DNA of 63,119 bases, the filler included, from Klebsormidium nitens (taxonomy: Eukaryota; Plantae; Klebsormidiophyceae): the NCBI GenBank assembly GCA_000708835.1. It is 8 parts of 8 records of this genome, joined end to end, with 100 filler letters (N's around TTAATTAATTAA, not from the genome) between each part and the next. Parts side by side here need not be neighbours in the genome. Positions count along the whole stretch, not along the records: positions 1 to 14,630 come from DF238038.1; 7 more parts are not named here. One strand, written 5' to 3'. The notes under the pieces are model-generated. The model saw only the letters and a list, made by a program, of their open reading frames with translations. It was not told where the DNA came from and ran no database searches. Position numbers and translations under genes: made by a program. Positions 1 through 14,630 of this stretch are shown here, piece after piece (within the stretch, counting starts at the first letter, position 1; each line of letters starts with the position of its first letter).

Positions 1-518
1 AGTTTTGGTGGAGAAGTTGGGTAGATTGCGCGGAACGTTTGGTTGCAGAATGCAGTTGAGCTGTTCGCAAGGCGCAGTCTGAAGATTGATCGGTCTCAAT
101 AGTGCCCTGTGGAAGTGCCTCAGAGAAGGACCAGGGAAGAGGTCCAGCAAGTGCTCCAGGAGTAAACAGTGGCAGAGTGGTTGTGGGAGCTGGGAACTGG
201 GAGCTTCCGCAAGGGGATCATCACCAAGCTTGTTGCTGTGAGAAGGCAGTCCTGTGGGCGGCCTTCCTCAAGTTGCTCGCGTTTCCAGTGGAACGGCGTA
301 CTGCGGACGTGCTCTGTGAGCTGTCCTTCATTGAGCCCTGTGGGCGTCAGCTGTGTACACTCCAGGCTTTGCAGACAGGTACAGTGTACCCCTTGAAACC
401 CTGGACTAACTTGTGTGTCATACACTTTGATTGAGCTGGTTCTGAGTTCCACACTTGCTGTTATCAGAGTTTGAGCTGAATCGGGCAGCCGTTTGGGAGC
501 TGAAACAGACTGAAGAAA

Positions 519-1325
519 GTGGAAGACTTAAAGGAGAAAGTTTTGCATTTGATTGCTCGACTAGACAATCTGAAGATTGGGGCAAAATCACCTCAGAGAA
601 TGGGGGGACCAGATACTCCAGCTGAAACAAGCGTCTCCGGAGAACATCCAGGGACCTTTGTATTCAGAACCAGGTTAGAGGAAGCCAATCCTTTCGTAGC
701 AACTGATGAGAGTCTTCAAAGGGGCATTGCTCAAACTCAGCATCCAGTAACTAGTGTGGAGGGAAATACGAGTGGGGCAGAAAATGAGTGTCCTCCCTTC
801 TCTTTTCAGACTGCCGGCACTCCAGAAGTAAACACACCGGCAGCTCGGCAAAGCACAATTGCCCCGTCATCGCTTTTGTCCAGTCAATTAAAGCAAGGTG
901 AAAGCTCTGGTTACGCATTGCATGCTCCTTTGAGTCCAGTATCAACTCCCACCTTCCTGTGTTTGCAACCAGACCCACGAACGGGGAGTAGCTCAATGTC
1001 ATGTTTGATGTCAACCAGTGGTGGACTCTATGGGGGGCACATAAGTGATGCAGACTTACGGATGCTTGTCGCACAGAATAGAGGTAAGCTGGCAGAAATA
1101 ATGCAAGAGCGGGAAACCCCCGCTCAAAGGCCATTTCAGTTCCCAGTCCAATCTACCCAAAAAGGGGACTATCTTACAGGAAAGTTGTCAGCTTCATTTC
1201 CTCACTTAGCATCGCAGTCTGCTTACGACTTTTCACATGCAGGGCGCTCCCCCCTTGAGGATATGAGCAGCCCTGACGCTTACGGGCCTGAAGCCCATTC
1301 TCAGCAGATTTTGAGAAGTACCTAA
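519..1325 (+). pseudogene. Probable low-complexity N-terminal part of gag, frameshifted relative to 1364
   Basis: 268-aa S/P-rich ORF directly upstream of the gag core; the frame of ORF 1364 reads plausibly (DFEKYLNHVPAF) from about 1307, implying an indel near 1300-1320. Confidence 0.45.
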
Positions 1326-1363
1326 ATCACGTCCCTGCTTTTCCTAATGTTAGTACTGGGGGT

Positions 1364-1773
1364 TTGGAGAACACCAGGAACACTGGTGACTTTCCGCCCA
1401 TGCGTACAGGCATCCCTCCTATGAATCATCTACCAACGTATGACGGGAAGCTGAAAGGGATCAGTGCGCGGTCTTGGATCAGTGATTTAGAGAACTACAG
1501 GAACTTGTATGGTTTGCATGAAGCCCAGCTCACTCCGCTTGCAAAAATCCTGTGCAGAGACGCTGCTCGGTTGTGGGCGGAAATCCAGCCTGCAAACCAG
1601 ACCTGGGCAGAGTTTGTTCTAGCTTTCAACGAGGAGTACGGCGTACACAATCGGGAGAAGCTGTGGCTTGACATGCTGAACAAGCGTCAAGGCACATCCT
1701 CGGTGGGTGAATATACAACAGACATGTTACGCTTCTTTATTCTGCTTGACATTCCTGAGAATGAACGTGTGCG
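1364..1773 (+). pseudogene. gag: gag capsid-like domain, 5' half (interrupted)
   Basis: LPTYDGK...ARSWISDLE...TWAEFVLAFNEEY...KRQGTSSVGEY is the retrotransposon gag pattern; joins in frame to 10179 after removing the insertion (ENERVR|KYIKNL). Confidence 0.85.
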
Positions 1774-1794
1774 CAACGGGTAGGCAACAAACAG
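1774..1794. repeat. Left terminal inverted repeat (21 bp), preceded by TSD TGTGCG at 1768-1773
   Basis: Reverse complement matches 10152-10172 with one mismatch at position 3. Confidence 0.95.
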
Positions 1795-2438
1795 ATAAAC
1801 AAGAGTGGCGTTTTCTGGACTAAACATGGTTTTTCGATGTCGAAACGAAAGAAAGCCGAATTACGGGGTCAACCATCATGATCGGTGTTACACGAGGTTT
1901 CGAAAAATACCCTTACTTCATAAATCTGATGTTTTTTGGGCCCGAAAAAACATCAATAAACATTGAAAAAACATGAAAAACAGTCTATACGTAGCACCGT
2001 GCAAGCCCGAGGGTCGAAAACCGGTTTTGTTTAAACAAACCAAACCAGGTTTATTACCAGGTTTGTTATGTTTTCTGAGGTTTTTTGGCTGTTTAGGTGG
2101 TTTTTGGAGGTTTTTCTGCTTCGCTAGGGGGTAACTTCAAATTAAGAGGGTTGTCACGAGCTCTAGGGGCCTCAAGAAAGCCAGAATTTACACCCCCTGC
2201 GGCGACATTGATGTTCCCACTGGTAGGCCGTTTGCAGAGTAGGGGTAAGGCTGTCAGCGACCAGTTCTGAATTGTGGTGATATCAGGAAAAGTTGCAAGA
2301 AGAAGGTTATTAGTAGAGCTGTAGGTTAGATAGGCTAGGGTCAGGGGGGATGCGGCAGTGATGGAAGCGAGGGTAGTGTGGTGCTGGGTTCTTCTGATTG
2401 CTCTTCTTGGCAGTGGCTCGCTAGAGGTTCGTGTCAAC

Positions 2439-5400
2439 ATGGCGAGCAGCCCTCGTGGTGCTTGCGCGAAAGTACACAAGGAGCTCATCCAACTTGGAGG
2501 CAAAGATGGATGCCAGGAGTTCAAACCCTCCAAGTTGGATCCAGAGACATGCAAGGGCTGCGAGTGTGACAGGACCTTCCACGAGAAGCTGAAGGTGGGG
2601 CCTGCGCAGCAGCCTGTGGGAAAGGAGACCGCTGGTGCACAACCTTTGCCCAAAGGGGGCCACCTTTCCGAGGGGGAGGACGAGGAAGTGCTGATGTTCG
2701 AGCATCCTCCAAAGAAGGTCAAGCTGGAGGGAGAGAAGAAAGGTATGTACTGGATCTTGAATCATTAGCTTAGACATTGCCCAGATTGGACACTACACAG
2801 ATGGGCATAGTATGGCTTCTCAATTGCCTGGTTGCCTGCTTTTCTTGCGCTTCAATGTGCTATCTTATTCTTTATGTAGCAGCATTGTCTGTCATGTTGT
2901 TGCAGATGTTATGGTTAATCTGCTTCAACCATGATTCTTGAGAATACTTGGAAGCAAAATGGGCAGACTGCTTGGCCTTTTTGAGTCAGCTCTGTAGGGT
3001 TTTCAGTGACCATTATCATCTGCTTGTTTAGATCATGTTAGGCTTCAGGGGTCTGCTTGAATCTTTGTCAGTCATCAGATCTTGACAGGATTGACAGGTT
3101 ACATTGGGCTGCAGGGTTTTAAACTTTGGGCCAGCATATAGATGAGATTCAATAATCTTTTCGAAGAGCAAAGTGATTTAGCTTTTTGTTTGCAGCCAAT
3201 GTTGAGATTCAGGGAAGAACAGGCGCAATGTACCCGTTTCATCGATTAGCACCTATAACGTATGCAGCCAGACTTTGCACCTCTGATCCGATGGCTTCAA
3301 TGAAGCTCACAAGCACCTCTGGATTGATTGACTACAGTGGTCAAAGAATGTAAGTTGGGACGCAAAGTCTGGCTGGGGATTGGCTGGGGACTGGCTCCAT
3401 TCGACATGTGACATTGCTTTAACTGTATCTTCACTGACAATGACATACGTTACATTGCAGATGGGGCGGCTGGCGGTCTACAGTGTCCTGACGTCACCCG
3501 GAAGAGCTTTAAGGCGCTGACCAGTAAGCGGCCATTTGAGAAATATGGGGAGTATGAGTTGAAGATCAATGCTGAGGGGGGAAAGCCGGTTTGGGCGGTG
3601 TGGTGCACGCCATGCGGGAAGTTTTTCAAGCCCAATTCCAGCAATGGCACGCTCAAGAATTTCGAGGGCCACCTCTCCGGGGCCACTCACGAGGCATCTC
3701 TGGCCAAGGCTGAGAAGAAGGGGAGGGAGGATGCTGAGAAGGCTGCAACTCTCCTGGCAAAGCGGACCGCCATGGTGGAGAAACACGAGAGCGACGGTGA
3801 GTACTAACATTGTACTCACATGATAACAAGGTTCAATCATTGTGCATCACGAAGCAATCCCAATGTTGCTTCAACCAGCGCTGTCTTGGCTTTTACTGCA
3901 ATCTGACGGTCCTAGTTTGACGGTCCTAGTTTGCCTGTGTGGCCAAGCCGCTCTCAAGTTTTGCACGAAAACAGACCTTTGCAAAGCTTGACAACAAGGT
4001 CCGGTCAAAAGCATCCTGTCTCAGATCTACCAACTTTGCAAAGCTTGAGATCAAGGTTAGGTCAGAGGACGCTGTTTTACAACTTGCAGTCCATTTTGCG
4101 AACAATGCTTTGTGCGTCCTGTAATCTGGTCAATCTGGTTGGTGAGGGCTAATGACAAAGGTCGTCCCTGCGTGGGACTCCGATCTGAACATCATGACAC
4201 CTGCTACAGTTGTCAGGTGTCTTCATGATTTGATTGTTATGAATCCATAGCTGAACGGCCTGAGGGGCAGTTGAAAAACCCCAGGCACTTTGTCTTTGAA
4301 AGTCTTGGTGGGATCTTTACCAGGCAGATCACAAGGGCTGTGATCTGATTCCTTCCTTAAAATGTGGTCTTTGCCCCTTTTTCTCAGCGTCTTTTGCAAT
4401 GCAAAGTCAGCCAGGTCTGCCCTCTCACAAGTTCTGCACTTTTGTGAGATGGATTAGTCAATACAAACTCGAGGTGACCTCACGCAACTTCACTTCATTT
4501 CATGCAGGTGCTGTCCTGGTCGTTGAGGAGAACTGGCGGTGCACGCTTTGCTCCTTCAGCGGCACCTTTGGCGGGGGGGACACTATTGCCAACCATGTCA
4601 GGGGTCAGCTTCACCAAGCCGCTGTAGCGGCAGCAGTTAAGGGGAAGCCAGCTGCCCAGAGGAGCATTGCCGATGTTTGGAACGTCGCCGCAGCAGAAGG
4701 GCGCGTCCAGTATCCTTTGGGCCATGCACCTAGCATCTCCGACATTCCGTCAGCCCAGCGGCGTGAGCACTTTGCGGCAATGTGCTGCCATGGCTTCTAT
4801 GCAAATGAGCTCAAGCTTGGGGATGAGGTCGTGTCGATCGCAAGTCTGAAGAACGATCTGCATCGGGGGGGGGAGTGGTATACCGAGCCGGAGTACATCT
4901 TTCAGACTGCTGAGGGGGTCACCGTTGTTGGCACTTTTTGCCATGTTGACTGCGAACGCTATGACTGCACAAAGTGCCCCTTGATTCCACGCTGTCCAGA
5001 CTTTTGGAGGAGGGTGGAAAGAGCAGCGAAAGCGGAGCTAACGAGGGGGGAGAGGGTTTGTGAGCCAGGGGTGGGGTTTGAGAACCTGCAGCGGGGGGAG
5101 TTGATAGAGTCCCTCAGAGAGTTCCAAAAGCGATGCCACAGTCTCAGACAGGAGGCTTTCTATTTGAACTCTTCTCTCACACGTCTTCGAAAGTCTGTCG
5201 TGTCTGTTTCCGGAAAGGTGGAGGAAGCGTTGCATAGTGGTGATCCCTCTCAGTTGGCCGAGATGGTTCGGCGTGCGTGTGATTTGGGCGCGTTCAGTGG
5301 GCGGACTCAATTGTATAACTTCCTTCTTGACCTCGCAAAGAACCTTGTTAGCGTGACAAAGCATGATGGGGACGCAAGGGGAAAGCGCTATCACAAGAGT

Positions 5401-8400
5401 ACAGTCCTGATGTTTGAGACGCTTGCGCGCTTTGGCGGACCTCTGGCTCACAATTTTGCCTCGCTCAACCTTCTTGGGCCTGTTCTAAACACATCTCTTG
5501 CCCAGTATCGCAAGGAAGCCTTCCACTTCCCTCCAGTCCTTTGCGAATTGCCCTTCGAGCAGGCTGCCAAAGTGTTGTCAGCTCATAAGCAGCGTCTTGG
5601 TATTTCAGGACATGTTCCAATCGAGTGTAGCGAGGATGAAACTGCCTCAATCAGACTGGCCACCTGGCATCGGGCTTCAGACACGATAGTGGGGTTTTGC
5701 GGAGAACTTCCTGCGGGTTCTGGAGTGCATTCCTGTTCCTTTGACTGCCAGCCCTCTGCCAGCTCACTCGAGAGCATTCAACAGGCTTTCAAAAACCTGA
5801 AAGTGGGGTCGATGTCCCGCCTTCTTCTTCTGAATCCACTAGTTGTGGGGCTCCCACGCCTCGTGTACGCCTTCTTGCCTACCTGCAATATGTTCTCGGC
5901 AGCCCAAGTGATGGAGCAGTGGAAAGTTGTGCGCGGCTTTCATGGAAGTCATTTGTCTGACATTGGGCCTCTGATTTCGCACGCCTCTGACGGCGACAAG
6001 CGACGGGTTAGGTGCATGCTGTCCAGCATAGGTCGGGGCTCTTACGGTCTTGACCACCCCACCTTTGTGATGAAAGCCGAAGTCTCCTCTGCTGGTCCAA
6101 TCCTGATGAACCAAGATCCAAATCACAACGCTAAGAAGTTGCGAAACTCCATCCTGAGCTCAACTCGAAACGTATTCTGGGGTTTGCATCTTGCTACCAA
6201 GAACCACCTAGCCCTTGTTCGAGAGCACTTTACAAGAGATCAGCATGGGCTTTTGGAAGAAGACGTTGACGTTAAAGACAAACAGAATACGGCCGCTGCC
6301 CATCGGCTTGCGTTTCCAAAAGTCAGAGCTTGTCTCGAGAAGGTGTGCGAGGGTTTCGTAGCGACCAATGGCACTTTCGTGCAGGAGGATTGTACAGGCA
6401 CCATTGCGCATCTTCTGGTTTTGGGGATGTATCTTGATATCTTCTTCGGCGCGGGAACACTTTTTGAGCGCATCAAGAGTGCCTCTTTCGTTGTCCACAT
6501 GCTTTTCTTTGCTTCCGAGTTTATCCGGCATCGGGGTGCTGGGCACACGTTGAAGGAAAACTGGGTCACTCGCGAGGCGCAGCTGGATATGCTCATTTCC
6601 TGCCACGCTGCTGTCAATCTCATCCGCCTTATGCGCGACCGCTTCCCTCACCTTCCTGTCGCTCTTCACTTATTTGGGACAGAATGCTGTGAGGAAACCT
6701 TCTCGTTGATTGGGCAAGCGGTTGTTAACAAGCATAATTACACTTACGGGGAGGCTCTGGAGCGGTTGTCGCATATTGGGCGGACCGCTGCCGTCCAAGT
6801 GGACGCGGACTCTCCCTTGTTTGCGTCCAATCGAAGGCGTAAGAATCTGTGGCACGAGGGCACTGAGCAGCCAGTGCCGACGGATCTGACGGCGGTCTTG
6901 AGCGACTACGCCTCTGTGAGCGAGCCAAAGGCGCTAAGAGCGTGGGAGCTTGGGTTGGAGTCCGCAAGGGAGAGGGCATCTAGCCTGGGCATGCGAGAAG
7001 TCCTGGAGGCGGCGAGGAAGTGGGACTCGCCGGTTCCTTTCACTTTGCGCGAAGCTGTCGCCGCTGTGGACTTGTTGCGGACGGAGGAGGATGAAGGTGA
7101 AGAAGCTGGCAGCTCTGAAGGTGGGTGTCCAAGACGTCACAACATCAAAGGATCCAGGGGTTTAAATCTGGGTTTAACACGTGGTCAATGATGTCGGTGG
7201 GTTTAGAGGCTGGTTATCAAAAGCGTTAGAGGGCTAAACCCCCATCTAAAACCTGACGGCATCCTGGGAGTTTGTAGGCTGTTTGGCATTAAATCTTGCG
7301 GGGTTTTCAAACAGGTTAAGTGGGGGTTCAAAGGAGTAACGTGCGAAACGAGTTGGGTTCTGGGTTTGGGGACAACGCAGGTTCGAGCATAGATCTGCAA
7401 CCATCTGGCTTTTCAACCTTACAATCTGGAACACATGGTTTGAGGGATTGGCTCCTGATGAGTATTGAATAGGCTGGCCGGTAGTCAGTCGAGGGGTTAA
7501 GTCTATGGTCAATTGTGTGATGACACGGTTTCAGGTTCTGCAACGTATGAACTTGAATCCATGAAACCTTCCAGACACCTGCTTCCAGATTTCTTTTTTG
7601 TTGTCGCAGCGACCACCGCCGATGCTGGAGACGCGGCTAGGCTGCCGGACGATGCAATCGACGTGCGCGCGGCGGTGTTGGACGCCGCCCAGCAGCTTGG
7701 CGATGAAGAGGGAGACACGGCGGAGGTGGACGGCGGTCGGGCTGCACACGGGAAGGTGCCGTCAACGGTTGACGTTCCTGGGAAAGGGCCCGTGTACAAG
7801 ATGCGAGTCATCTCGGAGCTCAACAAGCACCCGGGGAGTTTGCCGCTAGATTGGCTGAGGCGAGTTCAGGTCAGCACGTAACGCTCTACTTGGATTTGCG
7901 GGAGATCAACGTGCAGGGATGATCTACTTGGATTTGCGGGAGATCAACGTGCAGGGATGATTCCGTTTCTGCCATCAGTGCTTGTGAAGCTGAGATTTGA
8001 CTGCCGATTGTTGGTATGTGTCCCGACTACTTCGCTTCAGTCCATTCGTCAGGAGCCTATTTCTTTCGTCCGGAGCTCGAGCTGGAGATGATGTTTTTGC
8101 GCTCTGAAGATTGACTTCAGGCCTGGCCCATAGGATCTCCATTTTAGAATACGGACTCAATTTCTCGTGTAAGGATGAAACGTCAGCTTGAGCGTCGATC
8201 GACTATCTCGGGAGAATTCATTATTACTAACTTATAACTAATTATAACTAACGCCGAACTCTGTTCACTTTTCCAGGTGCGCGACACACCGGAGAACACC
8301 ACCGGTGCTGATGGCGGCGGAGGCGAGGAGGTTGGACTCTTTGATGTCGTCGCCGTCTACTTCGTCAACGGTCCGCTTGCGGAAGCGGACTCCCACCAGT

Positions 8401-9050
8401 GGTACCTCGGGCGCATCCAGAAGATGTTCAAGAAGTATGCTACGGGTGCGCGTGTCGACTATGTTCTGCCGGTAGGTTTTCTGCACTCGAGTGTCGCTGA
8501 AATTCTGCTGGAAGCAGAGAACTCGTAGATTGAAAAGAAGTCTTGAGATGCTCGCAAGACCTGTAGTTGCAAACCAGATTGTCTGTGTGTTGCAAGGTGT
8601 GGAAGCAGGCCCCATGCACACTCGCGCGCAGTTCTCTCATGAGCTTTTGGGTTCTTGCAGGTGTCTCTTGGCGACGAGCGGGACCCGGCAGTCCACCTGG
8701 TCCTCAAGTACTTTACGCGAACAGGGACCAAGACCTTTGTGTATGGCGGGCAGGAGGCGGCTGGCGAGGCCGACCCAATCTCGTTAGGGTCAGTAATAGG
8801 GAACGCAGACCTGCGAAAAGATGATCAAGGGTCCGCGTACACCTTGTCAGATAGCGATCTGCGGGCGTTTGAGGCATTTGTCGCTAACGAAGTTCGGAGT
8901 CAACAATTGGCAGCGGGAAGGAGGGCTCGGCCCCCTCCCGGGTCCCAAGCCGCAGAAGCACAGTCTCGGGCAGTGGCTGGTGCAAGGGTAGATCGAGTCG
9001 GGGTAACTACACGAACTGGTCGAGTTGCAAGTGCACTCGCACGCCGATAA
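2439..9050 (+). CDS. Six-exon P-like transposase (1365 aa): ZF-HD-type zinc finger, two C2H2 fingers, DDE core, C-terminal domain. Exons 2439-2742, 3461-3796, 4508-7120, 7610-7869, 8277-8471, 8661-9050
   Basis: All five introns are GT-AG and phase-compatible (1,1,1,0,0); total 4098 nt, no internal stop. Core motifs CSEDET, HASDGDKRR, QDPNHNAKKLRN (D-x2-H motif) and GTECCEETFS match P-element/THAP9-type transposases. Confidence 0.85.
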
Positions 9051-10151
9051 GAGGTCTAGGTGGATTTGTCTGCTTGGTGTTCGGCGCTCAAGACCTATTG
9101 ATTTTATTTATGGCAACACCAACCACCGGCCTTATTGAATTGCCCTCTCTACCTTTTCGAAAGCATTATTGTCCACTGTAAAACAGTTTAGGCGCGTGCA
9201 GACTTGCATGACTTCTCAAACCGCCCTCTCCGATTCTCTAGATTGAGTGCGTTGAAACTTTGTTTGAAATTCACCGAGTCGACCAAGACCAACCTCAATT
9301 GTAGATCGTACATAAGACTTGCAGCATGCTCTCAATAGATCAGTAATAAGATTTAAAGGAACACACCTCGTTGGAACATCTTTTTGGAGGTTTGAGGAAC
9401 ACACCGATGCTTATGAACATATGCAGTACATGCATGATGCACATGCACATTTCACAGATATCACTCACAAGATACAATATACAGCCTCTGGCCAGCGTGA
9501 GCACTGAGCACACCGACTCTGAGAGTCATGTCACCAATTCTATATCTTTGTAGTATGCATGAGTCAGCGCTGCGGCTTGTTGGCCGTTTCAAGGAATCCG
9601 TTTGAGTTTGCCACACTGACAAGTGTCTCCAGAGCTCAGCATTCTATAACTTCACTACCTTGATCTAAAACTGACAACATCACAGAGCATGTAATTGTGC
9701 GTATATACGAATCAACATAAGCGCATAATTCGAATCAATTGCATGGATGTTCTATGATTGACCTTTGCAGGCTCATTCTGCGAGTCTAGCAAACGTCTAG
9801 CATGTCTGCTTTGGCACCCCTATCCGTATGCAATTGTGAGGAAAGCATGTCGATATGCTAGGTTGGCCAATGATGCCATGATCTATATGCGGACTGTTAC
9901 AAAGATCACAATAGAAGTGTCGTTTAGAAGTGGTTTAGAAGTGGTTTGACTTATTTGCGACCTTTAAAAGATGCTATCTGTGTCCCACATTGAAAAAACC
10001 CAAAAAAAAACCCTAACGAACATCGACAAACCCTGAAAAACATGCTTTTGAAAATCTAATGTTTATTATGTTTATTATGTCTAACATGTTTGTGCTCCCT
10101 GGTAAAGCCACTACTTTTGCCATGTTTTTTCACGGTGGTAGTAGCAATAAA

Positions 10152-10172
10152 CTGTTTGTTGCCTACCCGGTG
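10152..10172. repeat. Right terminal inverted repeat (21 bp), followed by TSD TGTGCG at 10173-10178
   Basis: CTGTTTGTTGCCTACCCGGTG read directly from the sequence. Confidence 0.95.
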
Positions 10173-10178
10173 TGTGCG

Positions 10179-11787
10179 CAAATACATCAAAAACTTGAAC
10201 TTTGGAATCAGGAAGAACTGCATGGCTAGAAATCCTGCTACTATGCAAGAGGCCATTGCAGCTGCTCGCGTCGCTGAACAGATTTACGAAACTATTCCGG
10301 ATCAAGACCCTCAGTCAAAACTCAATTCGTTAGAGAAACAAGTAGGGCAACTTCTGCTCACAGAGTCCCCAAAGAGGACTCATGGTACTAGGGCTCAGTC
10401 CAACGGTCCTGCAAATGGGTCTGGCAATGATGGTCATACCGCGGGTGATAGTAGGGGTTCAGATGGCAGGCGCGCGTGGCGCTGTCCTAGGTGCCTGGTA
10501 GAAGGCGGGCCTTATCACACCATTCGGGACTGTCCGAATGAACAACGCGCCCAGTACAACTCTTGCTGTTGGTTTTATGGTAGACACAGGGCTGACTGTT
10601 CCGAAAGGAGCCGCGGCCCTGCGGGCGGTACAGCGGAACACAATTTTCTAGAAGAGGTGGAAGTGATTGACCAGGATTATGGGATGCCCCCTCTTGAGTC
10701 TGGTGTGCCGGCTGAGCTGTATGCAGTTGAGGGTGAAGATTCTGAATCTTGGTCTGAGGATGAGGATGAATACTCCAGTTCCGATGAGTCTTTGGAAGAG
10801 GTTGAAATCTACGCTCAGAAAAGAGGGCGTGAAGAACCCACTGTCAGTGCAGGGACTGGCCGCCAGGCGGGTCGAGACAAGCGCCGCTTACCAAATCAGC
10901 GTGAGCCGGTAAAACCTGTTGCGAATCCTCTCACTGCAGAACAAAAGCGGCAGCGCACTGAAGCTAGGGCGCGCAACCGTCAACAACAAGAAGTCCAAAA
11001 TGAGCTCATGATCAAAGCTGCACTTGGTGAGGCGCGAGAGCGCCTGGTCAGTCACAAACAAGTCAAACACTTTCGTACTGATCTTCACAGGTACGTCGAC
11101 AGACTGTTTGCACATCAGAAACGGACACGTCCAAAAGCGGCTCAAACAGCCGGGCGTGACGCTACTGGCGGAGAGCAGCAACCCCCTGCAAAGAAGGGAA
11201 GACCTTCTGATCCGCCGCGTGAGTCTAACTATCTCAAAGTAGAAACGGATCCGAAGTATGATGTTCCAAATCTGCGAACCGAGGTGCAAGTCTTGGTCGA
11301 AGATGTTCCGACTCGCATCATTCTCGATTCTGGGGCAACAATGTCTGGTGTGTCAGAGAGCTTGGTGCACAAGCTGAAAATCGCTCACAAAATCCGGCCC
11401 ACTGAGGCCGCTTACAAAACTTCTTCTGGCGAACTTCGTCCTGCTTTGGGCACCGCTCCGATTCACCTCCGCCTTGGCACTCTGAAGGTTAAAACCCGGA
11501 TGATTGTCATGCCTGCCGAATGCTCCTACAATCTGCTCTTGGCGAATGACGTGATGGCTCCTCTGAAGATTGATATCCTTAGGAGCAGAAACGAAATTCA
11601 GTGTCACTATGCCGGAGAAAAGGTCGTTTTGCCAATCGTTGCTGAAAGGGGTGATCCCCGAGACGCCTTGTTTAACGACGCTTACTTTGTCACGACGGTT
11701 GAGTCCGTTCATGGTGATGCCTGGGTCGGACAACAGCCGCCAGTCATCAAATTGACCCGCCTGTCAAAAAACGGACGGCCCCCGTAA
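10179..11787 (+). pseudogene. gag C-terminal half, CCHC-type knuckle and aspartic protease
   Basis: RNPATMQEAIAAAR; CPRC...HTIRDC knuckle; IILDSGATMSGVS protease active site; YNLLLAND. Confidence 0.88.
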
Positions 11788-11809
11788 GTTCGAGGGACTA
11801 TTGTGTCCC
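11766..11809 (+). promoter_or_regulatory. Candidate -1 programmed ribosomal frameshift signal between protease and RT
   Basis: A_AAA_AAC at 11766-11772 is in the correct phase of the gag-pro ORF, 4 codons before its stop; the -1 frame is open from there into the RT ORF; hairpins ACGG-ccc-CCGT (11775-11785) and GGGAC-tattgt-GTCCC (11794-11809) follow. Confidence 0.7.
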
Positions 11810-11852
11810 AGAAGATAAGGGACAAGTCCTTAAGGGGGTCAAAATCCGAACT

Positions 11853-13568
11853 GTGGCGGACTTAGAAGTAGTTCGGAGGTGGGCTAAAGCTGACAAGGCT
11901 CCAAACGGGCAATTGAAAAAGTTGCTAAAGAAAGCTAAAAAGGCGATTCTCAACCCGGACATTGGTTCGTTTACCTGGTTGTACCGTGATGGTGTGTCTG
12001 AACCTCCTGTTGAATTGATCCGAATGCAGGTACAAGTTGTTTCGAACTCCGACCAGGAAGTCTACTCCCAAGAGCCGGCACAAAAGGCCGACTACACCGT
12101 GGAGGACGTCCAGCGCATCGTGTCAGAGATCACCTTCGGCAAAACTTTGACACCCTCTGAGCGGCAAGAGCTTGAAGACGTCATTCGACGTCGGATCACC
12201 AGCTTCAGCCGTTACAAAGGTGATGTCGGATTCACTACCTTAATTGAGCATGAGATTGACCTTTTGAATAAAACCCCGATCAAAGTTCGGCCTTTCAAAA
12301 TGTCGTTTGCAGAGCAGAAGATTGCATTAGAGTACATTCAGCAATTTTTGAAAGAAGGAATCATTCGACGCTCTACATCTCCTTGGTCTGTCCCTGCTTT
12401 CCTGGTGGCCAAACCCAATCAGCCAGGCCAGTATCGTATGGTGGTCGACTGGCGTCTCCTTAACAAGGCCACTCGGTCCTGGGCGATGCCTCTGCCGTTC
12501 ATCACTGATTTGCACCAGAAACTGGGCAGGTCCAAGTACTTTGCAACAATGGACGTCACTTCTGGCTTTTACAACATTCCCCTAAAGAAAGAACATCAGC
12601 AGTATACAGCGTTCTCCCTTCGTAATATAGGTCTTTTTGAGTGGTTAGTGATGCCGATGGGGCTAAAGAACTCCCCGGCCACCTTCACTCGCCTTCAAGA
12701 GATCATCTTTCCTCCGATTGATTACGGTGAATTCCTCAGTATCTATCTTGATGATCTTTGTTGTCATGCAGGCACAGTCACCGAACTGGCCCGACATCTG
12801 GATCGCGTGCTCGAACGTCTCTCTTGGGCGGGCCTCAAGCTGAATCCCAAGAAGTGTACGATTGGAGCCGAGGAAGTTGAGTATCTCGGCCATATCATTT
12901 CGCAAGAAGGCATGAGAATGTCTCCTCGAAAGATAGAGGCCATCCAGAATCTGCAGAGCCCTCGTACTGTAAAACAGCTACAGGCCGTGCTTGGGTTGTT
13001 CCAGTATTATCGTGTCTTTATCCACCGGTTTGCTCACCTTGCGAAACCGATGACGAAACTCCTTTCTAAACAAGAGGATTTCAACTGGTCAGCTACTTGT
13101 CAGCAAGCTTTCGAGACTTTAAAGCAAAAGCTGTGTGCGCCGCCAATTCTGGCTCGGTACGATCCTCGTTTTCGCCTTGTCCTAGACACGAACTACGAGA
13201 AGACTACCGTTTCGGCCATCTTGGGGATGCAAAACCCCGCCTACAAACGTGAGAAGGTCATAGGTTACGCATCTCGGACCCTTAGCAAGACGAAAATGGG
13301 TACAACCGAGGGCGAACTCTCTGCTCTGATTTTTGGTTTGAAGCACTTCTCCGAGTTTCTTCGCGGTGGCCCTGAGTTTCTGGTTCGGACCGACCATGCG
13401 GCTCTCACATGGCTGAGAACCATGAACCCTCAACAGGGTAAACTCGCTCGTTGGCTTTCCTACATTGAATCAGACTTTTCTTTCGTGGTTGAGCACCGAA
13501 AGGGCATCAAGCACTCAAATGCGGACGCTCTTTCTCGCGCCAGCGCTTCGCATCTCTCTCGTGACTAA
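11853..13568 (+). CDS. pol: Reverse transcriptase + RNase H (pol), followed by an in-frame stop
   Basis: SPWSVPAFLVAK, RMVVDWRLLN, VMPMGLKNSPATF, IYLDD, LDTN, RTDHAAL, HSNADALSR. Confidence 0.95.
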   Translation: MADLEVVRRWAKADKAPNGQLKKLLKKAKKAILNPDIGSFTWLYRDGVSEPPVELIRMQVQVVSNSDQEVYSQEPAQKADYTVEDVQRIVSEITFGKTLTPSERQELEDVIRRRITSFSRYKGDVGFTTLIEHEIDLLNKTPIKVRPFKMSFAEQKIALEYIQQFLKEGIIRRSTSPWSVPAFLVAKPNQPGQYRMVVDWRLLNKATRSWAMPLPFITDLHQKLGRSKYFATMDVTSGFYNIPLKKEHQQYTAFSLRNIGLFEWLVMPMGLKNSPATFTRLQEIIFPPIDYGEFLSIYLDDLCCHAGTVTELARHLDRVLERLSWAGLKLNPKKCTIGAEEVEYLGHIISQEGMRMSPRKIEAIQNLQSPRTVKQLQAVLGLFQYYRVFIHRFAHLAKPMTKLLSKQEDFNWSATCQQAFETLKQKLCAPPILARYDPRFRLVLDTNYEKTTVSAILGMQNPAYKREKVIGYASRTLSKTKMGTTEGELSALIFGLKHFSEFLRGGPEFLVRTDHAALTWLRTMNPQQGKLARWLSYIESDFSFVVEHRKGIKHSNADALSRASASHLSRD

Positions 13569-14630
13569 TTGACTGACTCCTCTTACCTCCTCCTTTCTCC
13601 AGATCAGTCAATGAAATTCGGCGTCCCTCGTGTGACGTCATCTGACACGCCACCAGCCAACATCACCATTTCGACTGAAAAGCGGACCGGACTGCCAACC
13701 ACAGCGGATCCTGCGGCCAAGAAGCAAAAGCTTCCTGAGGACGCCAAACCTTCAGACGTTGCTGCTGGTGAGCTTGCTGGTCCATCGACTTCTTCCTTAC
13801 CAAAGAAGAAGTACGTTTATACTTTGACTGAACAGCAAGAGTTAAAACGCGCTCATTATGACCTTCTTCACCAGATCTCTGACTTCAAAGACAACACAGG
13901 GTGATTTTCCCTCGACCGTGGTCACAAAATACGAACGGCGAAACTTCAAGAACAAAGCTAAAAACTTTTCTCTTGAAAGTGGGACGTTGTATAAACTTAA
14001 ACCTCATGGTAAAGTTCGCGTTTTGTGGGAGGAAGAAGTTCTTCCTACCTTAAAGGGTATGCACGAAGAGCTTTCTCACTACCCTAAAGATAAAAGCAAG
14101 TTTCGTATCAAGGTTGAAGAGCGTTTCTTTTTCCCTCTACTGACGGAGATTTGTCATAAGTTTATTGCGTCTTGCCCGGAGTGCCAAAACGAAAAGGCAG
14201 GGCGGGCATGTAGAACCGACCGTGAACTTTTTCCGACTCCTCTTGTTTCTCCTTGGTTTCGAGTGCACATCGACTTATGTGGTCCGTTTGAACCGTCTAG
14301 AAAAAAGAAGTGGACGTACATAGTGGTAGCAATCTGCGCATTCACTAAGTTGGTCGTTGGAGGTGGCCTCAGAGAAAAGACTGCGGCCACAGTCACAAAT
14401 TGGTTTAAAGAGGCAATAATGTTTCAGCATGGTTACCCGTTTCAGGTCGTGTCTGATCAAGGGTCCGAATTTCGAGCCGAGTTTGAAGCCCTTCTTAAAG
14501 CAGCTGGGCTCAAACAAGTCCGAGTTACCACAGGCAACCAAAAAGCTAACGGCCAAGTTGAGCATATGATGTCCGTTATTAAGTCGAACCTTAGGATTAT
14601 GTGCGATGCCGAGCCTGACACGTGGGACAA
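13569..14630 (+). pseudogene. Connector and integrase (HHCC zinc finger + DDE core), frameshift near 13885, truncated by gap
   Basis: MHEELSH...CHKFIASCPECQ; RVHIDLCGPF; VVSDQGSEF; NGQVEHMM. Confidence 0.9.

What the first reader, a model, noticed from the sequence alone, without database searches (positions are those of the whole stretch)
2439..2742. Plant ZF-HD-type zinc finger spliced onto a transposase
Exon 1 encodes C-x3-H-x9-DGCQEFKP...C-x2-C-x-C-x-R-x-FH, the signature of the ZF-HD dimerisation domain found in streptophyte ZF-HD/MIF transcription factors. It splices in phase to two C2H2 fingers and the DDE core, giving a 1365-aa fusion with no THAP domain. Either the element captured a host TF domain (possibly to dimerise or to be recruited via host ZF-HD proteins), or the plant domain itself derives from such transposons, as proposed for WRKY and FAR1/FHY3. 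I know of no description of this architecture (inference; unsearched).
Basis: partly seen in the sequence, partly recalled or inferred. Interest (0 to 1): 0.85.

Follow-up and report, generated by a model that had tools for sequence, protein, structure and literature searches.

The report
P-like transposon carrying ZF-HD-type finger
The window holds a complete, transcribed cut-and-paste DNA transposon of the P-element kind whose transposase begins with a zinc finger that looks like the dimerisation finger of plant ZF-HD/MIF transcription factors, an architecture I found described nowhere, which bears on where that plant domain came from.

Summary
Exon 1 (2439-2742) encodes C9-x3-H13-x11-C25-x12-C38-x2-C41-x-C43-D-x3-H48. 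That is 7 of the 8 ligands of the published ZF-HD pattern, with exact spacings.

**Finger identity.** The only Pfam match is ZF-HD_dimer: 27.2 bits for the isolated domain and 25.3 for the whole exon, against a cut-off of 27. hhalign against the Pfam consensus gives 94% probability. TIGR01566 also matches, but far below its cut-off.

**Splicing.** The six-exon model gives an intact 1365-aa protein with no THAP domain.

**Transposase.** The body is a P-element-type transposase. The AlphaFold model has pLDDT 88.5, and its top Foldseek match is Drosophila P transposase (E 7e-10, TM 0.71).

**Element bounds.** I found them at 1775-10171: 20-bp inverted ends (19/20) and a perfect 8-bp duplication, GTGTGCGC. 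The element sits inside the gag ORF of a Ty3/gypsy element, and that ORF is restored by in-silico excision.

**Conservation.** Copies 47-65% identical carry the same end motif or the same N-terminal finger, and most carry both. One is in Klebsormidium nitens and five are in an algal metagenome. The finger is therefore an old part of this transposon lineage.

**Open.** Whether it was captured from the host or gave rise to the host domain is unresolved.

The parts
1767..1774 (.). left copy of the 8-bp target-site duplication GTGTGCGC
   Evidence: identical to 10172-10179
1775..1794 (+). left terminal inverted repeat AACGGGTAGGCAACAAACAG
   Evidence: 19/20 match to the reverse complement of 10152-10171. 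The core 12-mer occurs only twice in the window against 0.04 expected. The same motif ends the paralogs in L003, L006, L005 and L002.
1822..1975 (.). left subterminal region with AAACATG repeats (1822-1828, 1969-1975); candidate transposase-binding sites; presumably also the promoter and 5'UTR
   Evidence: 5 of the window's 6 AAACATG matches lie within 200 bp of the element ends. Similar CATGTTT/AAACAT clusters lie at the ends of L003, L005 and L006. A contig of run X1 covers 2300-2480 and runs past 2300. Binding is inferred.
2439..2742 (+). exon 1: start codon, ZF-HD-type finger, variable acidic linker, basic PPKKVKL motif
2463..2582 (+). ZF-HD_dimer-like zinc finger, residues C9 to H48
   Evidence: Pfam PF04770 27.2 bits for the isolated domain. 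TIGR01566 28 bits. hhalign 94.4% against the Pfam consensus. Spacings fit CX3HX11CX12-26CX2CXCHX3H (PMC13087070).
2706..2726 (+). PPKKVKL, a conserved basic motif and probable nuclear localisation signal
   Evidence: Similar K/R-rich motifs sit at the same place in L002, L003, L005 and L006. The NLS role is inferred from resemblance to the SV40-type signal.
2743..3460 (+). intron 1 (718 nt, GT..AG)
   Evidence: skipped in a contig of run X3; absent in the paralogs, where finger 1 and finger 2 lie in one ORF
3461..3796 (+). exon 2 with the second finger, C150-x2-C153 ... H172-x5-H178 (3604-3690), BED/C2H2-like
   Evidence: no Pfam family; conserved in L001, L002, L003, L005 and L006
3797..4507 (+). 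intron 2 (711 nt, GT..AG)
   Evidence: skipped in contigs of runs X2 and X3
4508..7120 (+). exon 3: third C2H2-like finger (4540-4614), HTH, and the RNase H-like catalytic core with a helical insertion domain. Putative catalytic D590 (5635-5637), D708 (5989-5991) and E942 (6691-6693).
   Evidence: AF2 pLDDT 88.5. Foldseek top hit 6p5a_A at E 7e-10, TMt 0.71. The family profile hits the P transposase at E 3.6e-4, aligning EDET with FDEM and CCE with VEH. Family-wide invariant D, D, D..H and E. Assignment of the catalytic residues is inferred.
7610..7869 (+). exon 4
   Evidence: tblastn to P0005/P0006, in-phase GT..AG; no RNA evidence
8277..8471 (+). exon 5 (conserved VGLFD...GRIQKMFK block of the C-terminal domain)
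   Evidence: no Pfam family
8661..9050 (+). exon 6 and stop codon TAA (9048-9050)
10038..10127 (.). right subterminal AAACATG repeats (10038, 10085, 10121)
10152..10171 (-). right terminal inverted repeat (reverse complement ACCGGGTAGGCAACAAACAG)
10172..10179 (.). right copy of the target-site duplication GTGTGCGC

Best explanation
Window 1775-10171 is a complete, apparently autonomous DNA transposon of the P-element superfamily. It is 8,397 bp long, with 20-bp terminal inverted repeats and an 8-bp target-site duplication, and it has inserted into the gag ORF of a Ty3/gypsy retrotransposon. Its six-exon gene encodes a 1365-aa transposase. The usual N-terminal THAP DNA-binding domain of P-type transposases is replaced by three zinc fingers. 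The first, encoded by exon 1, is a divergent member or close relative of the ZF-HD dimerisation finger of streptophyte ZF-HD/MIF proteins. After the fingers come the P-type HTH, an RNase H-like D-D-E core with a helical insertion domain, and a conserved C-terminal domain of unknown type.

Shown: the finger sequence and its HMM matches, the two splice junctions, the fold of the core, the TIRs and TSD, and conservation of the finger in six diverged copies.

Inferred: the N-terminal fingers recognise the subterminal AAACATG repeats and/or pair two transposase molecules, as the ZF-HD finger does in plant proteins, so that the two ends are brought together for cut-and-paste transposition. The finger most likely entered this transposon lineage once, by capture of a host ZF-HD/MIF-type exon in an ancestor of the klebsormidiophycean copies. 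It has been kept under selection since.
For: **Finger**
- Sequence.
- Pfam PF04770: E 1.9e-5 at 25.3 bits for the whole exon and 27.2 bits for the isolated domain, against a cut-off of 27.
- Paralogs score 28.5, 27.3, 25.1, 23.8 and 33.0 bits.
- TIGR01566 hits 6 of 7 family fingers.
- hhalign of the family fingers against the Pfam consensus printed in PMC9690586: probability 94.4%, 42 columns, 40% identity.
- The window fits the published ligand pattern at 7 of 8 positions.
- Different copies keep different plant-like features: ECLRN and a 13-residue loop in L009, H-R after the CxxCx(C/H) motif in K. nitens, and C-x3-H in the window and L006.
- The nearest language-model clusters are all ZF-HD_dimer (a lead only).

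**Same protein**
- Contigs join 2742|3461 and 3796|4508.
- In L001, L002, L003, L005 and L006, fingers 1 and 2 lie in one uninterrupted ORF.

**Transposase**
-.

**Mobile element**
- TIRs, a perfect TSD, and a 696-aa gag-protease ORF restored when the element plus one TSD copy is removed in silico.
- TIR plus 8-bp TSD also in L003, L006 and K. nitens L001.
- Decayed copies with in-frame stops in L002 and L006.

**Selection on the finger**
- Cys/His, G, Q, F and P are invariant across copies whose linkers are unalignable.
Against: - ZF-HD membership is borderline. The whole exon scores under Pfam's cut-off, and all copies score far under TIGR01566's 51.1 bits.
- The seventh ligand (His) is Asp in the window and absent in most copies. 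The second ligand (His) is present only in the window and L006.
- The K. nitens finger gets no Pfam hit.
- The AlphaFold model of the finger is poor (pLDDT 60), so no fold comparison was possible, and no ZF-HD finger structure was found in the PDB by sequence.
- I could not retrieve plant ZF-HD sequences for a real profile-profile test or a tree.
- The runs with spliced contigs are only guessed to be RNA.
- Exons 4-6 rest on homology alone.
- Neither transposition activity nor the finger's role was tested.
Confidence: 0.8

Rival explanations
1. The exon-1 finger is an unrelated Cys/His finger that matches the ZF-HD models by convergence. Most of the HMM score comes from six cysteines and one histidine at compatible spacings.
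For: Scores sit at or under Pfam's cut-off and far under TIGR01566's. Only 6 of the 8 ligand positions are conserved across the family. K. nitens gets no Pfam hit. No structural support could be obtained.
Against: Non-ligand residues match too: GG..DGC.EF.P, FH, ECLRN in L009 and HR in K. nitens, and L009 has the plant loop length. hhalign gives 94%. Among 24,736 Pfam models nothing else matches the window's finger at E<=10. Two independently built HMMs agree.
Confidence: 0.22
2. The host ZF-HD/MIF finger descends from the N-terminal finger of this transposon lineage (transposon to transcription factor), as proposed for WRKY-MULE, FAR1-MULE, BED-hAT and THAP-P.
For: The finger is ancestral to a transposon clade whose members differ by about 50% in protein sequence. 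The clade lives in streptophyte algae. The origin of ZF-HD is called unclear in PMC10415114.
Against: None of the 158 proteins retrieved from the wider family (1179 cluster representatives) shows the finger, and long N-termini there carry other domains. This suggests the finger was gained by one sub-lineage. The transposon fingers are more degenerate than the plant consensus. A 45-residue domain cannot be rooted.
Confidence: 0.15
3. The gene is a domesticated, immobile transposase-derived host gene, not a transposon.
For: The K. nitens homologue is annotated as a single hypothetical protein among ordinary genes. The ORF is intact and it is expressed.
Against: There are near-perfect TIRs, a perfect 8-bp TSD and an insertion inside a gypsy gag ORF. 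The K. nitens copy also has TIRs and a TSD. At least five diverged copies occur in one metagenome sample (3300060284), two of them with in-frame stops. Flanks show no synteny.
Confidence: 0.03
4. Exon 1 belongs to another gene or to a read-through transcript and is joined to the transposase only by chance or by assembly.
For: Only one contig (209 nt, depth 5) spans the exon 1-exon 2 junction.
Against: Exon 1 lies inside the TIRs. The finger precedes the transposase in all seven copies examined. It is in the same ORF as finger 2 in five of them, with a conserved Met-Ala start just before it.
Confidence: 0.02

Closest known systems
Drosophila P element and the P superfamily of DNA transposons (THAP9-like transposases)
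   Same: RNase H-like D-D-E core with a large helical insertion domain and an upstream HTH. The best structural match is 6p5a and there is a profile match. Short TIRs, 8-bp TSD, subterminal repeats, and a multi-intron transposase gene.
   Different: No THAP domain. The N-terminus instead has a ZF-HD-type finger plus two C2H2/BED-like fingers. There is an extra conserved C-terminal domain (exons 4-6). No Pfam TNP-like model reaches significance on this protein. GTP binding was not examined.
ZF-HD_dimer domain (Pfam PF04770, TIGR01566) of plant ZHD and MIF proteins
   Same: Cys/His pattern and spacings, plus the GG..DGC.EF.P and FH residues. Pfam score at the gathering cut-off. hhalign 94%.
   Different: It is attached to a transposase, not to a homeodomain or a mini-protein. 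The seventh ligand His is missing and the second is variable. The loop is 4 residues shorter in most copies. Dimerisation was not tested.
Transcription-factor DNA-binding domains shared with transposases (WRKY/GCM1-MULE, FAR1/FHY3-MULE, BED-hAT, THAP-P; PMC1702500, PMC4948706)
   Same: A zinc-binding domain typical of a host regulator family sits at the N-terminus of a DNA transposase.
   Different: The ZF-HD finger is known as a protein-protein (dimerisation) module, not a DNA-binding one. No domesticated descendant is shown here, and the direction of transfer is unknown.

Membership tests
P-element superfamily transposon | RNase H-like DDE catalytic domain interrupted by a large insertion domain, with P-transposase fold | tested here: met
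   AF2 model pLDDT 88.5. Foldseek top hits are 6p5a_A and 6pe2_A at E 7e-10 and 2e-9, TMt 0.71; the next hits, RAG1/Transib, are at E>1e-3. Profile against the PDB: P transposase at E 3.6e-4.
P-element superfamily transposon | Catalytic acidic triad present | tested here: met
   EDET, SDGD and CCE motifs are present in the window protein (D590, D708, E942). They are invariant or nearly so in the family. EDET aligns with FDEM and CCE with VEH of the P transposase. Activity was not tested.
P-element superfamily transposon | Terminal inverted repeats and a 7-8 bp target-site duplication | tested here: met
   20-bp TIRs at 19/20 and an 8-bp TSD, GTGTGCGC. An 8-bp TSD also in L003, L006 and K. nitens.
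P-element superfamily transposon | N-terminal THAP zinc-finger DNA-binding domain | tested here: not met
   No THAP hit in any exon at E<=1 or in 38 long family members at E<=0.01.
P-element superfamily transposon | P-type HTH domain (PF12017) before the core | tested here: inconclusive
   Not detected in the window protein. 2 of 38 family members hit PF12017, best E 6.4e-5. The profile alignment to P transposase residues 95-247 covers that region.
P-element superfamily transposon | GTP-binding insertion domain and GTP dependence | not tested
   A helical insertion is present in the model, but no motif analysis or assay was done.
ZF-HD_dimer (PF04770) | Score at or above Pfam's gathering cut-off (27 bits) | tested here: inconclusive
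   Window: 25.3 bits for the whole exon and 27.2 for the isolated domain. Paralogs: 33.0, 28.5, 27.3, 25.1 and 23.8 bits. K. nitens: none.
ZF-HD_dimer (PF04770) | Ligand pattern CX3HX11CX12-26CX2CXCHX3H (PMC13087070) | tested here: inconclusive
   Window: 7 of 8 ligands with spacings 3, 11, 12, 2, 1, 3; Asp replaces the seventh. Across the family six positions are kept.
ZF-HD_dimer (TIGR01566 ZF_HD_prot_N) | Score at or above the curated cut-off of 51.1 bits | tested here: not met
   18.8-28.2 bits in six copies, none in K. nitens.
ZF-HD_dimer (PF04770) | Mediates homo- and heterodimerisation | not testable with these tools
   Needs yeast two-hybrid, SEC-MALS or similar.
ZF-HD/MIF transcription factor family | Finger alone (MIF) or followed by a ZF-HD-class homeodomain | tested here: not met
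   The finger is followed by two other fingers and a transposase. There is no homeobox hit.

The most novel reading that the evidence does not exclude
The dimerisation finger that defines streptophyte ZF-HD and MIF regulators was born in, or spread by, this P-like transposon lineage of streptophyte algae. ZF-HD would then join WRKY, FAR1, BED and THAP as a transposon-derived transcription-factor domain. Alternatively, the transposase still uses the finger to pair with host ZHD/MIF proteins and so couples transposition to host developmental or stress regulators.
Probability: 0.15. Interest if true: 0.85.

Novelty: new variant of a known kind. Interest (0 to 1): 0.66.

Why it matters
ZF-HD and MIF proteins regulate flowering, organ growth and stress responses in plants. 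A recent kingdom-wide study states that the origin of their signature finger is unclear (PMC10415114).

Here the finger is a conserved part of an intact, transcribed DNA transposon in streptophyte algae. That gives a concrete and testable link between this domain and mobile elements. It also gives a set of natural variants for asking what the finger needs in order to bind zinc and to dimerise.

For transposon biology, it shows a P-type transposase that has swapped THAP for a different N-terminal module. It also supplies a candidate active element, with defined ends, for a plant-lineage organism.

As a by-product, the Klebsormidium nitens gene KFL_000070500 can be re-annotated as a transposase with a wrongly modelled N-terminus.

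Tried and rejected
1. My first TIR searches covered only 1-10100 and found nothing. The right end lies at 10152-10171. I found it only after the paralogs gave the end motif.

2. I tried three ways to pull plant ZF-HD/MIF sequences for a real profile-profile test and a tree, and all came back empty:
- The search for homologous proteins with the finger alignment A4 gave nothing at E<=10.
- The same tool with the L009 ORF restricted to the finger gave only one paralog.

With a database of 5.8 billion sequences, a score of about 28 bits cannot reach E<=10. These blanks therefore say nothing about relatedness.

3. AlphaFold on the finger with 7 sequences gave pLDDT 60. The atlas fold search with that model returned unrelated rows at TM about 0.3, which is uninformative. 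The PDB holds no sequence relative of the finger.

4. The family-finger HMM and a regular expression found no finger in the 158 proteins retrieved from the wider family. Most of those are ORF fragments lacking upstream exons, so absence is weakly supported.

5. Domesticated gene: rejected (TIRs, TSD, insertion in gag, decayed copies).

6. A conserved RNA hairpin in exon 1: rejected, because the 14-nt inverted repeat is not conserved in the paralogs.

Full report
**1. The observation**

A rice MIF paper gives the ZF-HD dimerisation finger as CX3HX11CX12-26CX2CXCHX3H (PMC13087070). The window gives C9-x3-H13-x11-C25-x12-C38-x2-C41-x-C43-D44-x3-H48. That is seven of the eight ligands, with every spacing inside the published pattern. 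Asp stands where the seventh ligand (His) should be.

**2. Is it a ZF-HD finger?**

HMM and profile evidence:
- Pfam gives one family for exon 1, PF04770 ZF-HD_dimer, at E 1.9e-5 and 25.3 bits against a gathering score of 27. The match covers profile positions 7-52 of 55.
- Scanned as an isolated domain, the finger scores 27.2 bits. It matches no other Pfam family even at E<=10.
- The independently built TIGR01566 model (ZF_HD_prot_N) also matches, at 28 bits and E 2e-6. That is far under its strict 51.1-bit cut-off.
- The Pfam consensus is printed in PMC9690586. hhalign of my alignment of seven transposon fingers against it gives probability 94.4%, 42 aligned columns and 40% identity.
- The three nearest ESM-Atlas clusters by language-model features are all ZF-HD_dimer clusters (a lead only).

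The resemblance goes beyond the ligands:
- GG..DGC.EF.P and F-H are shared.
- Different copies of the element keep different plant-like features.
  - The copy in L009 has G-E-C-L-R-N, against the consensus r-e-C-l-r-N. It also has the 13-residue loop of plants and scores 33 bits.
  - The Klebsormidium nitens copy keeps H-R after the C-x2-C-x-(C/H) motif.
  - Only the window and L006 keep C-x3-H.

This mosaic retention is what descent from a more plant-like ancestor predicts.

Evidence against membership:
- Only six ligand positions are conserved across the family.
- The K. nitens finger gets no Pfam hit.
- A fold test was impossible. AlphaFold gave pLDDT 60, the fold search with that model was meaningless, and the PDB holds no sequence relative.

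I put homology with ZF-HD_dimer at about 0.75. Membership in the strict sense is borderline.

**3. Is it joined to the downstream protein?**

The splice sites are canonical and in phase. Contigs from four small runs of one study were laid on 2300-7300. They are labelled 'RNA?' as a guess and come from an organism whose name is coded. All are 100% identical to the window:
- One contig of X3 skips 2743-3460.
- Contigs of X2 and X3 skip 3797-4507.
- A contig of X1 covers 2300-2480 and runs on upstream.

Intron-less, GT..AG-bounded joins at exactly the predicted sites are hard to explain other than by cDNA.

Independently, in five relatives (L001, L002, L003, L005, L006) finger 1 and finger 2 lie in one uninterrupted ORF that starts with Met-Ala just before the finger.

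Three more exons were placed by tblastn with the relatives P0005 and P0006 and by in-phase GT..AG sites. The six exons give 4098 nt, which is 1365 codons plus a stop with no internal stop. Exons 4-6 have no transcript support.

**4. What the big protein is**

Pfam is silent on it. Homology and fold evidence is nevertheless clear:
- An exhaustive HMMER search finds 1179 cluster representatives at E<=0.001, so the family is large.
- The family keeps the motifs A-E-D-E-T, H-x-S-D-G-D-x-R-R-R-K, D-Q-D-x-x-H-x-x-K-K-L-x-N and G-S-D-C-C-E-x-x-F-S.
- A profile of 140 members hits the Drosophila P element transposase in the PDB (6p5a, E 3.6e-4). It aligns E-D-E-T with F-D-E-M and, below threshold, C-C-E with V-E-H.
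- Two of 38 long members hit Pfam's P-transposase HTH model.
- AlphaFold with that alignment gives mean pLDDT 88.5 and pTM 0.74.
- Foldseek ranks the two P transposase chains first (E 7e-10 and 2e-9, TM 0.71 by target, about 500 columns). RAG1/Transib and Hermes come well behind.
- All the acidic motif residues are present in the window protein (D590, D708, E942).
- No THAP domain is found in this protein or in 38 relatives.

**5. It is a complete transposon**

Comparing the relatives' flanks showed a shared inverted end motif, CGGGTAGGCAA(C/G)T. The 12-mer CGGGTAGGCAAC occurs twice in the window, at 1777 (+) and 10169 (-), against 0.04 expected.

The ends of the element:
- The left end reads AACGGGTAGGCAACAAACAG.
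- The right end, reverse-complemented, reads ACCGGGTAGGCAACAAACAG.
- GTGTGCGC flanks both ends, at 1767-1774 and 10172-10179.

Further support for these bounds:
- Removing 1775-10179 in silico fuses the flanks into one 696-aa ORF.
- The left part of that ORF hits Retrotrans_gag, cut off at the junction. The right part carries the capsid end and the aspartic protease of a Ty3/gypsy element, which continues with RT, RNase H and integrase.
- The element therefore jumped into a retrotransposon's gag, and the boundaries and the 8-bp duplication are confirmed.
- Five of the window's six AAACATG heptamers lie within 200 bp of the two ends. Similar clusters sit at the ends of the relatives. These are candidate transposase-binding sites.

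**6. The family**

All the relatives below are 47-65% identical to the window in the transposase.

| Locus | Source | Ends | Finger and ORF state |
|---|---|---|---|
| L003/L004 | JGI 3300060284 and 3300060285 | end motif on both sides, TSD TTCGTAAC | finger present |
| L006 | JGI 3300060284 | end motif on both sides, TSD ATTTGGGC | finger present; in-frame stop |
| L005 | JGI 3300060285 | end motif on both sides, no TSD left | finger present |
| L002 | JGI 3300060284 | left end present; right end off the contig | finger present; in-frame stop |
| L009 | JGI 3300060284 | no end motif found | finger present |
| L001 | K. nitens KFL_000070500 | 15-bp ends CCCGAGGTGGCAACT, TSD CTCAATCT | degenerate finger in the main N-terminal ORF |

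For the K. nitens copy, the annotated first exon lies outside the element.

The finger is thus an ancestral, selected part of this transposon clade. Its Cys/His, Gly, Gln, Phe and Pro positions are invariant, while the linker after it cannot be aligned.

In the 158 proteins retrieved from the wider family the finger was not seen. Long N-termini there carry other domains, such as SAP and C1. One more distant copy with 2.4 kb of upstream sequence (L007) shows no finger. Most of these proteins are ORF fragments, so this is weak evidence that the finger was gained by one sub-lineage.

**7. How it most likely works**

Shown:
- an intact transposase gene inside intact ends;
- a spliced transcript;
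- a P-type catalytic fold;
- 8-bp duplications.

Inferred:
- Cut-and-paste transposition.
- The three N-terminal fingers take the place of THAP in recognising the subterminal repeats.
- The ZF-HD-type finger contributes to pairing of transposase molecules. In plants this finger mediates homo- and heterodimerisation (PMC13087070).
- The conserved basic motif PPKKVKL at the end of exon 1 probably acts as a nuclear localisation signal.

My estimates for the origin of the finger:

| Scenario | Estimate |
|---|---|
| Capture of a host ZF-HD/MIF-type exon by the transposon | about 0.6 |
| Transposon-to-host origin | about 0.15 |
| Convergence | about 0.2 |

**8. Known or new**

Full-text searches for ZF-HD with transposase, for PF04770, and for P elements in algae found no description of this architecture. 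PMC10415114 surveyed ZF-dimer hits across 46,624 genomes. It calls the origin unclear, reports hits outside plants and never mentions transposons.

The element is a new variant of a known kind: the P superfamily with a novel N-terminal module. The closest named relative of the element is in Klebsormidium nitens, so a klebsormidiophycean or other streptophyte alga is likely but unproven.

Noticed in passing
window 1-1774 and 10180-14630: A Ty3/gypsy retrotransposon (gag, aspartic protease, RT, RNase H, integrase) is split by the DNA transposon. Its gag-protease ORF (696 aa) becomes continuous when the insert and one TSD copy are removed in silico. The integrase runs off the end of the piece.
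   Followed up: partly
L001 10180-16791 (Klebsormidium nitens DF236956.1, gene KFL_000070500): The annotated 'hypothetical protein' is the transposase of a complete copy with 15-bp TIRs (CCCGAGGTGGCAACT) and the 8-bp TSD CTCAATCT. The annotated first exon (from 10001) lies outside the element. An in-frame Met at 10905 opens an ORF (10902-11816) holding a degenerate finger 1 and finger 2.
   Followed up: partly
window 2743-3460: Intron 1 is peculiar to the window's copy. In L001, L002, L003, L005 and L006 the finger and the second finger lie in one uninterrupted ORF, so this intron was gained here or lost in the others.
   Followed up: no
window 2487-2500 and 2527-2540: A perfect 14-nt inverted repeat inside exon 1 brackets the DGCQEF codons and forms a strong predicted hairpin. 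It is not conserved in the six relatives, so it is probably incidental.
   Followed up: yes
window 7610-9047 (exons 4-6); P0005 from about 900, P0006 from about 1200, P0007 and P0009 C-termini: A conserved C-terminal domain (VPGKG.VYK...LS.DRL.RVQ, VGLFDDVA, W.LGRIQKMFK, Y..PV) is shared even with 30%-identical relatives and matches no Pfam family. One of 38 family members hits a Tudor-type model (PTM_DIR17_Tudor), but I did not locate where.
   Followed up: partly
L002 about 9240 and L006 about 1915: In-frame stop codons lie in the second-finger region of two metagenome copies (CQPC* and CEP*), so these copies are decaying.
   Followed up: no
L005 13121-13789; L009 6818-9394; L005 1-339: Other mobile elements lie next to the relatives: a PIF/Harbinger-type DDE_Tnp_4 ORF, Ty3/gypsy RT and integrase, and a gag aspartic protease. 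These copies sit in repeat-rich DNA.
   Followed up: no
L001 11439-11594 (residues 179-230 of the ORF 10905-11816): The second finger of the K. nitens copy gives a weak hit to Pfam zf-C17orf113 (E 0.0035, under the cut-off). The window's exon 2 gives none.
   Followed up: no
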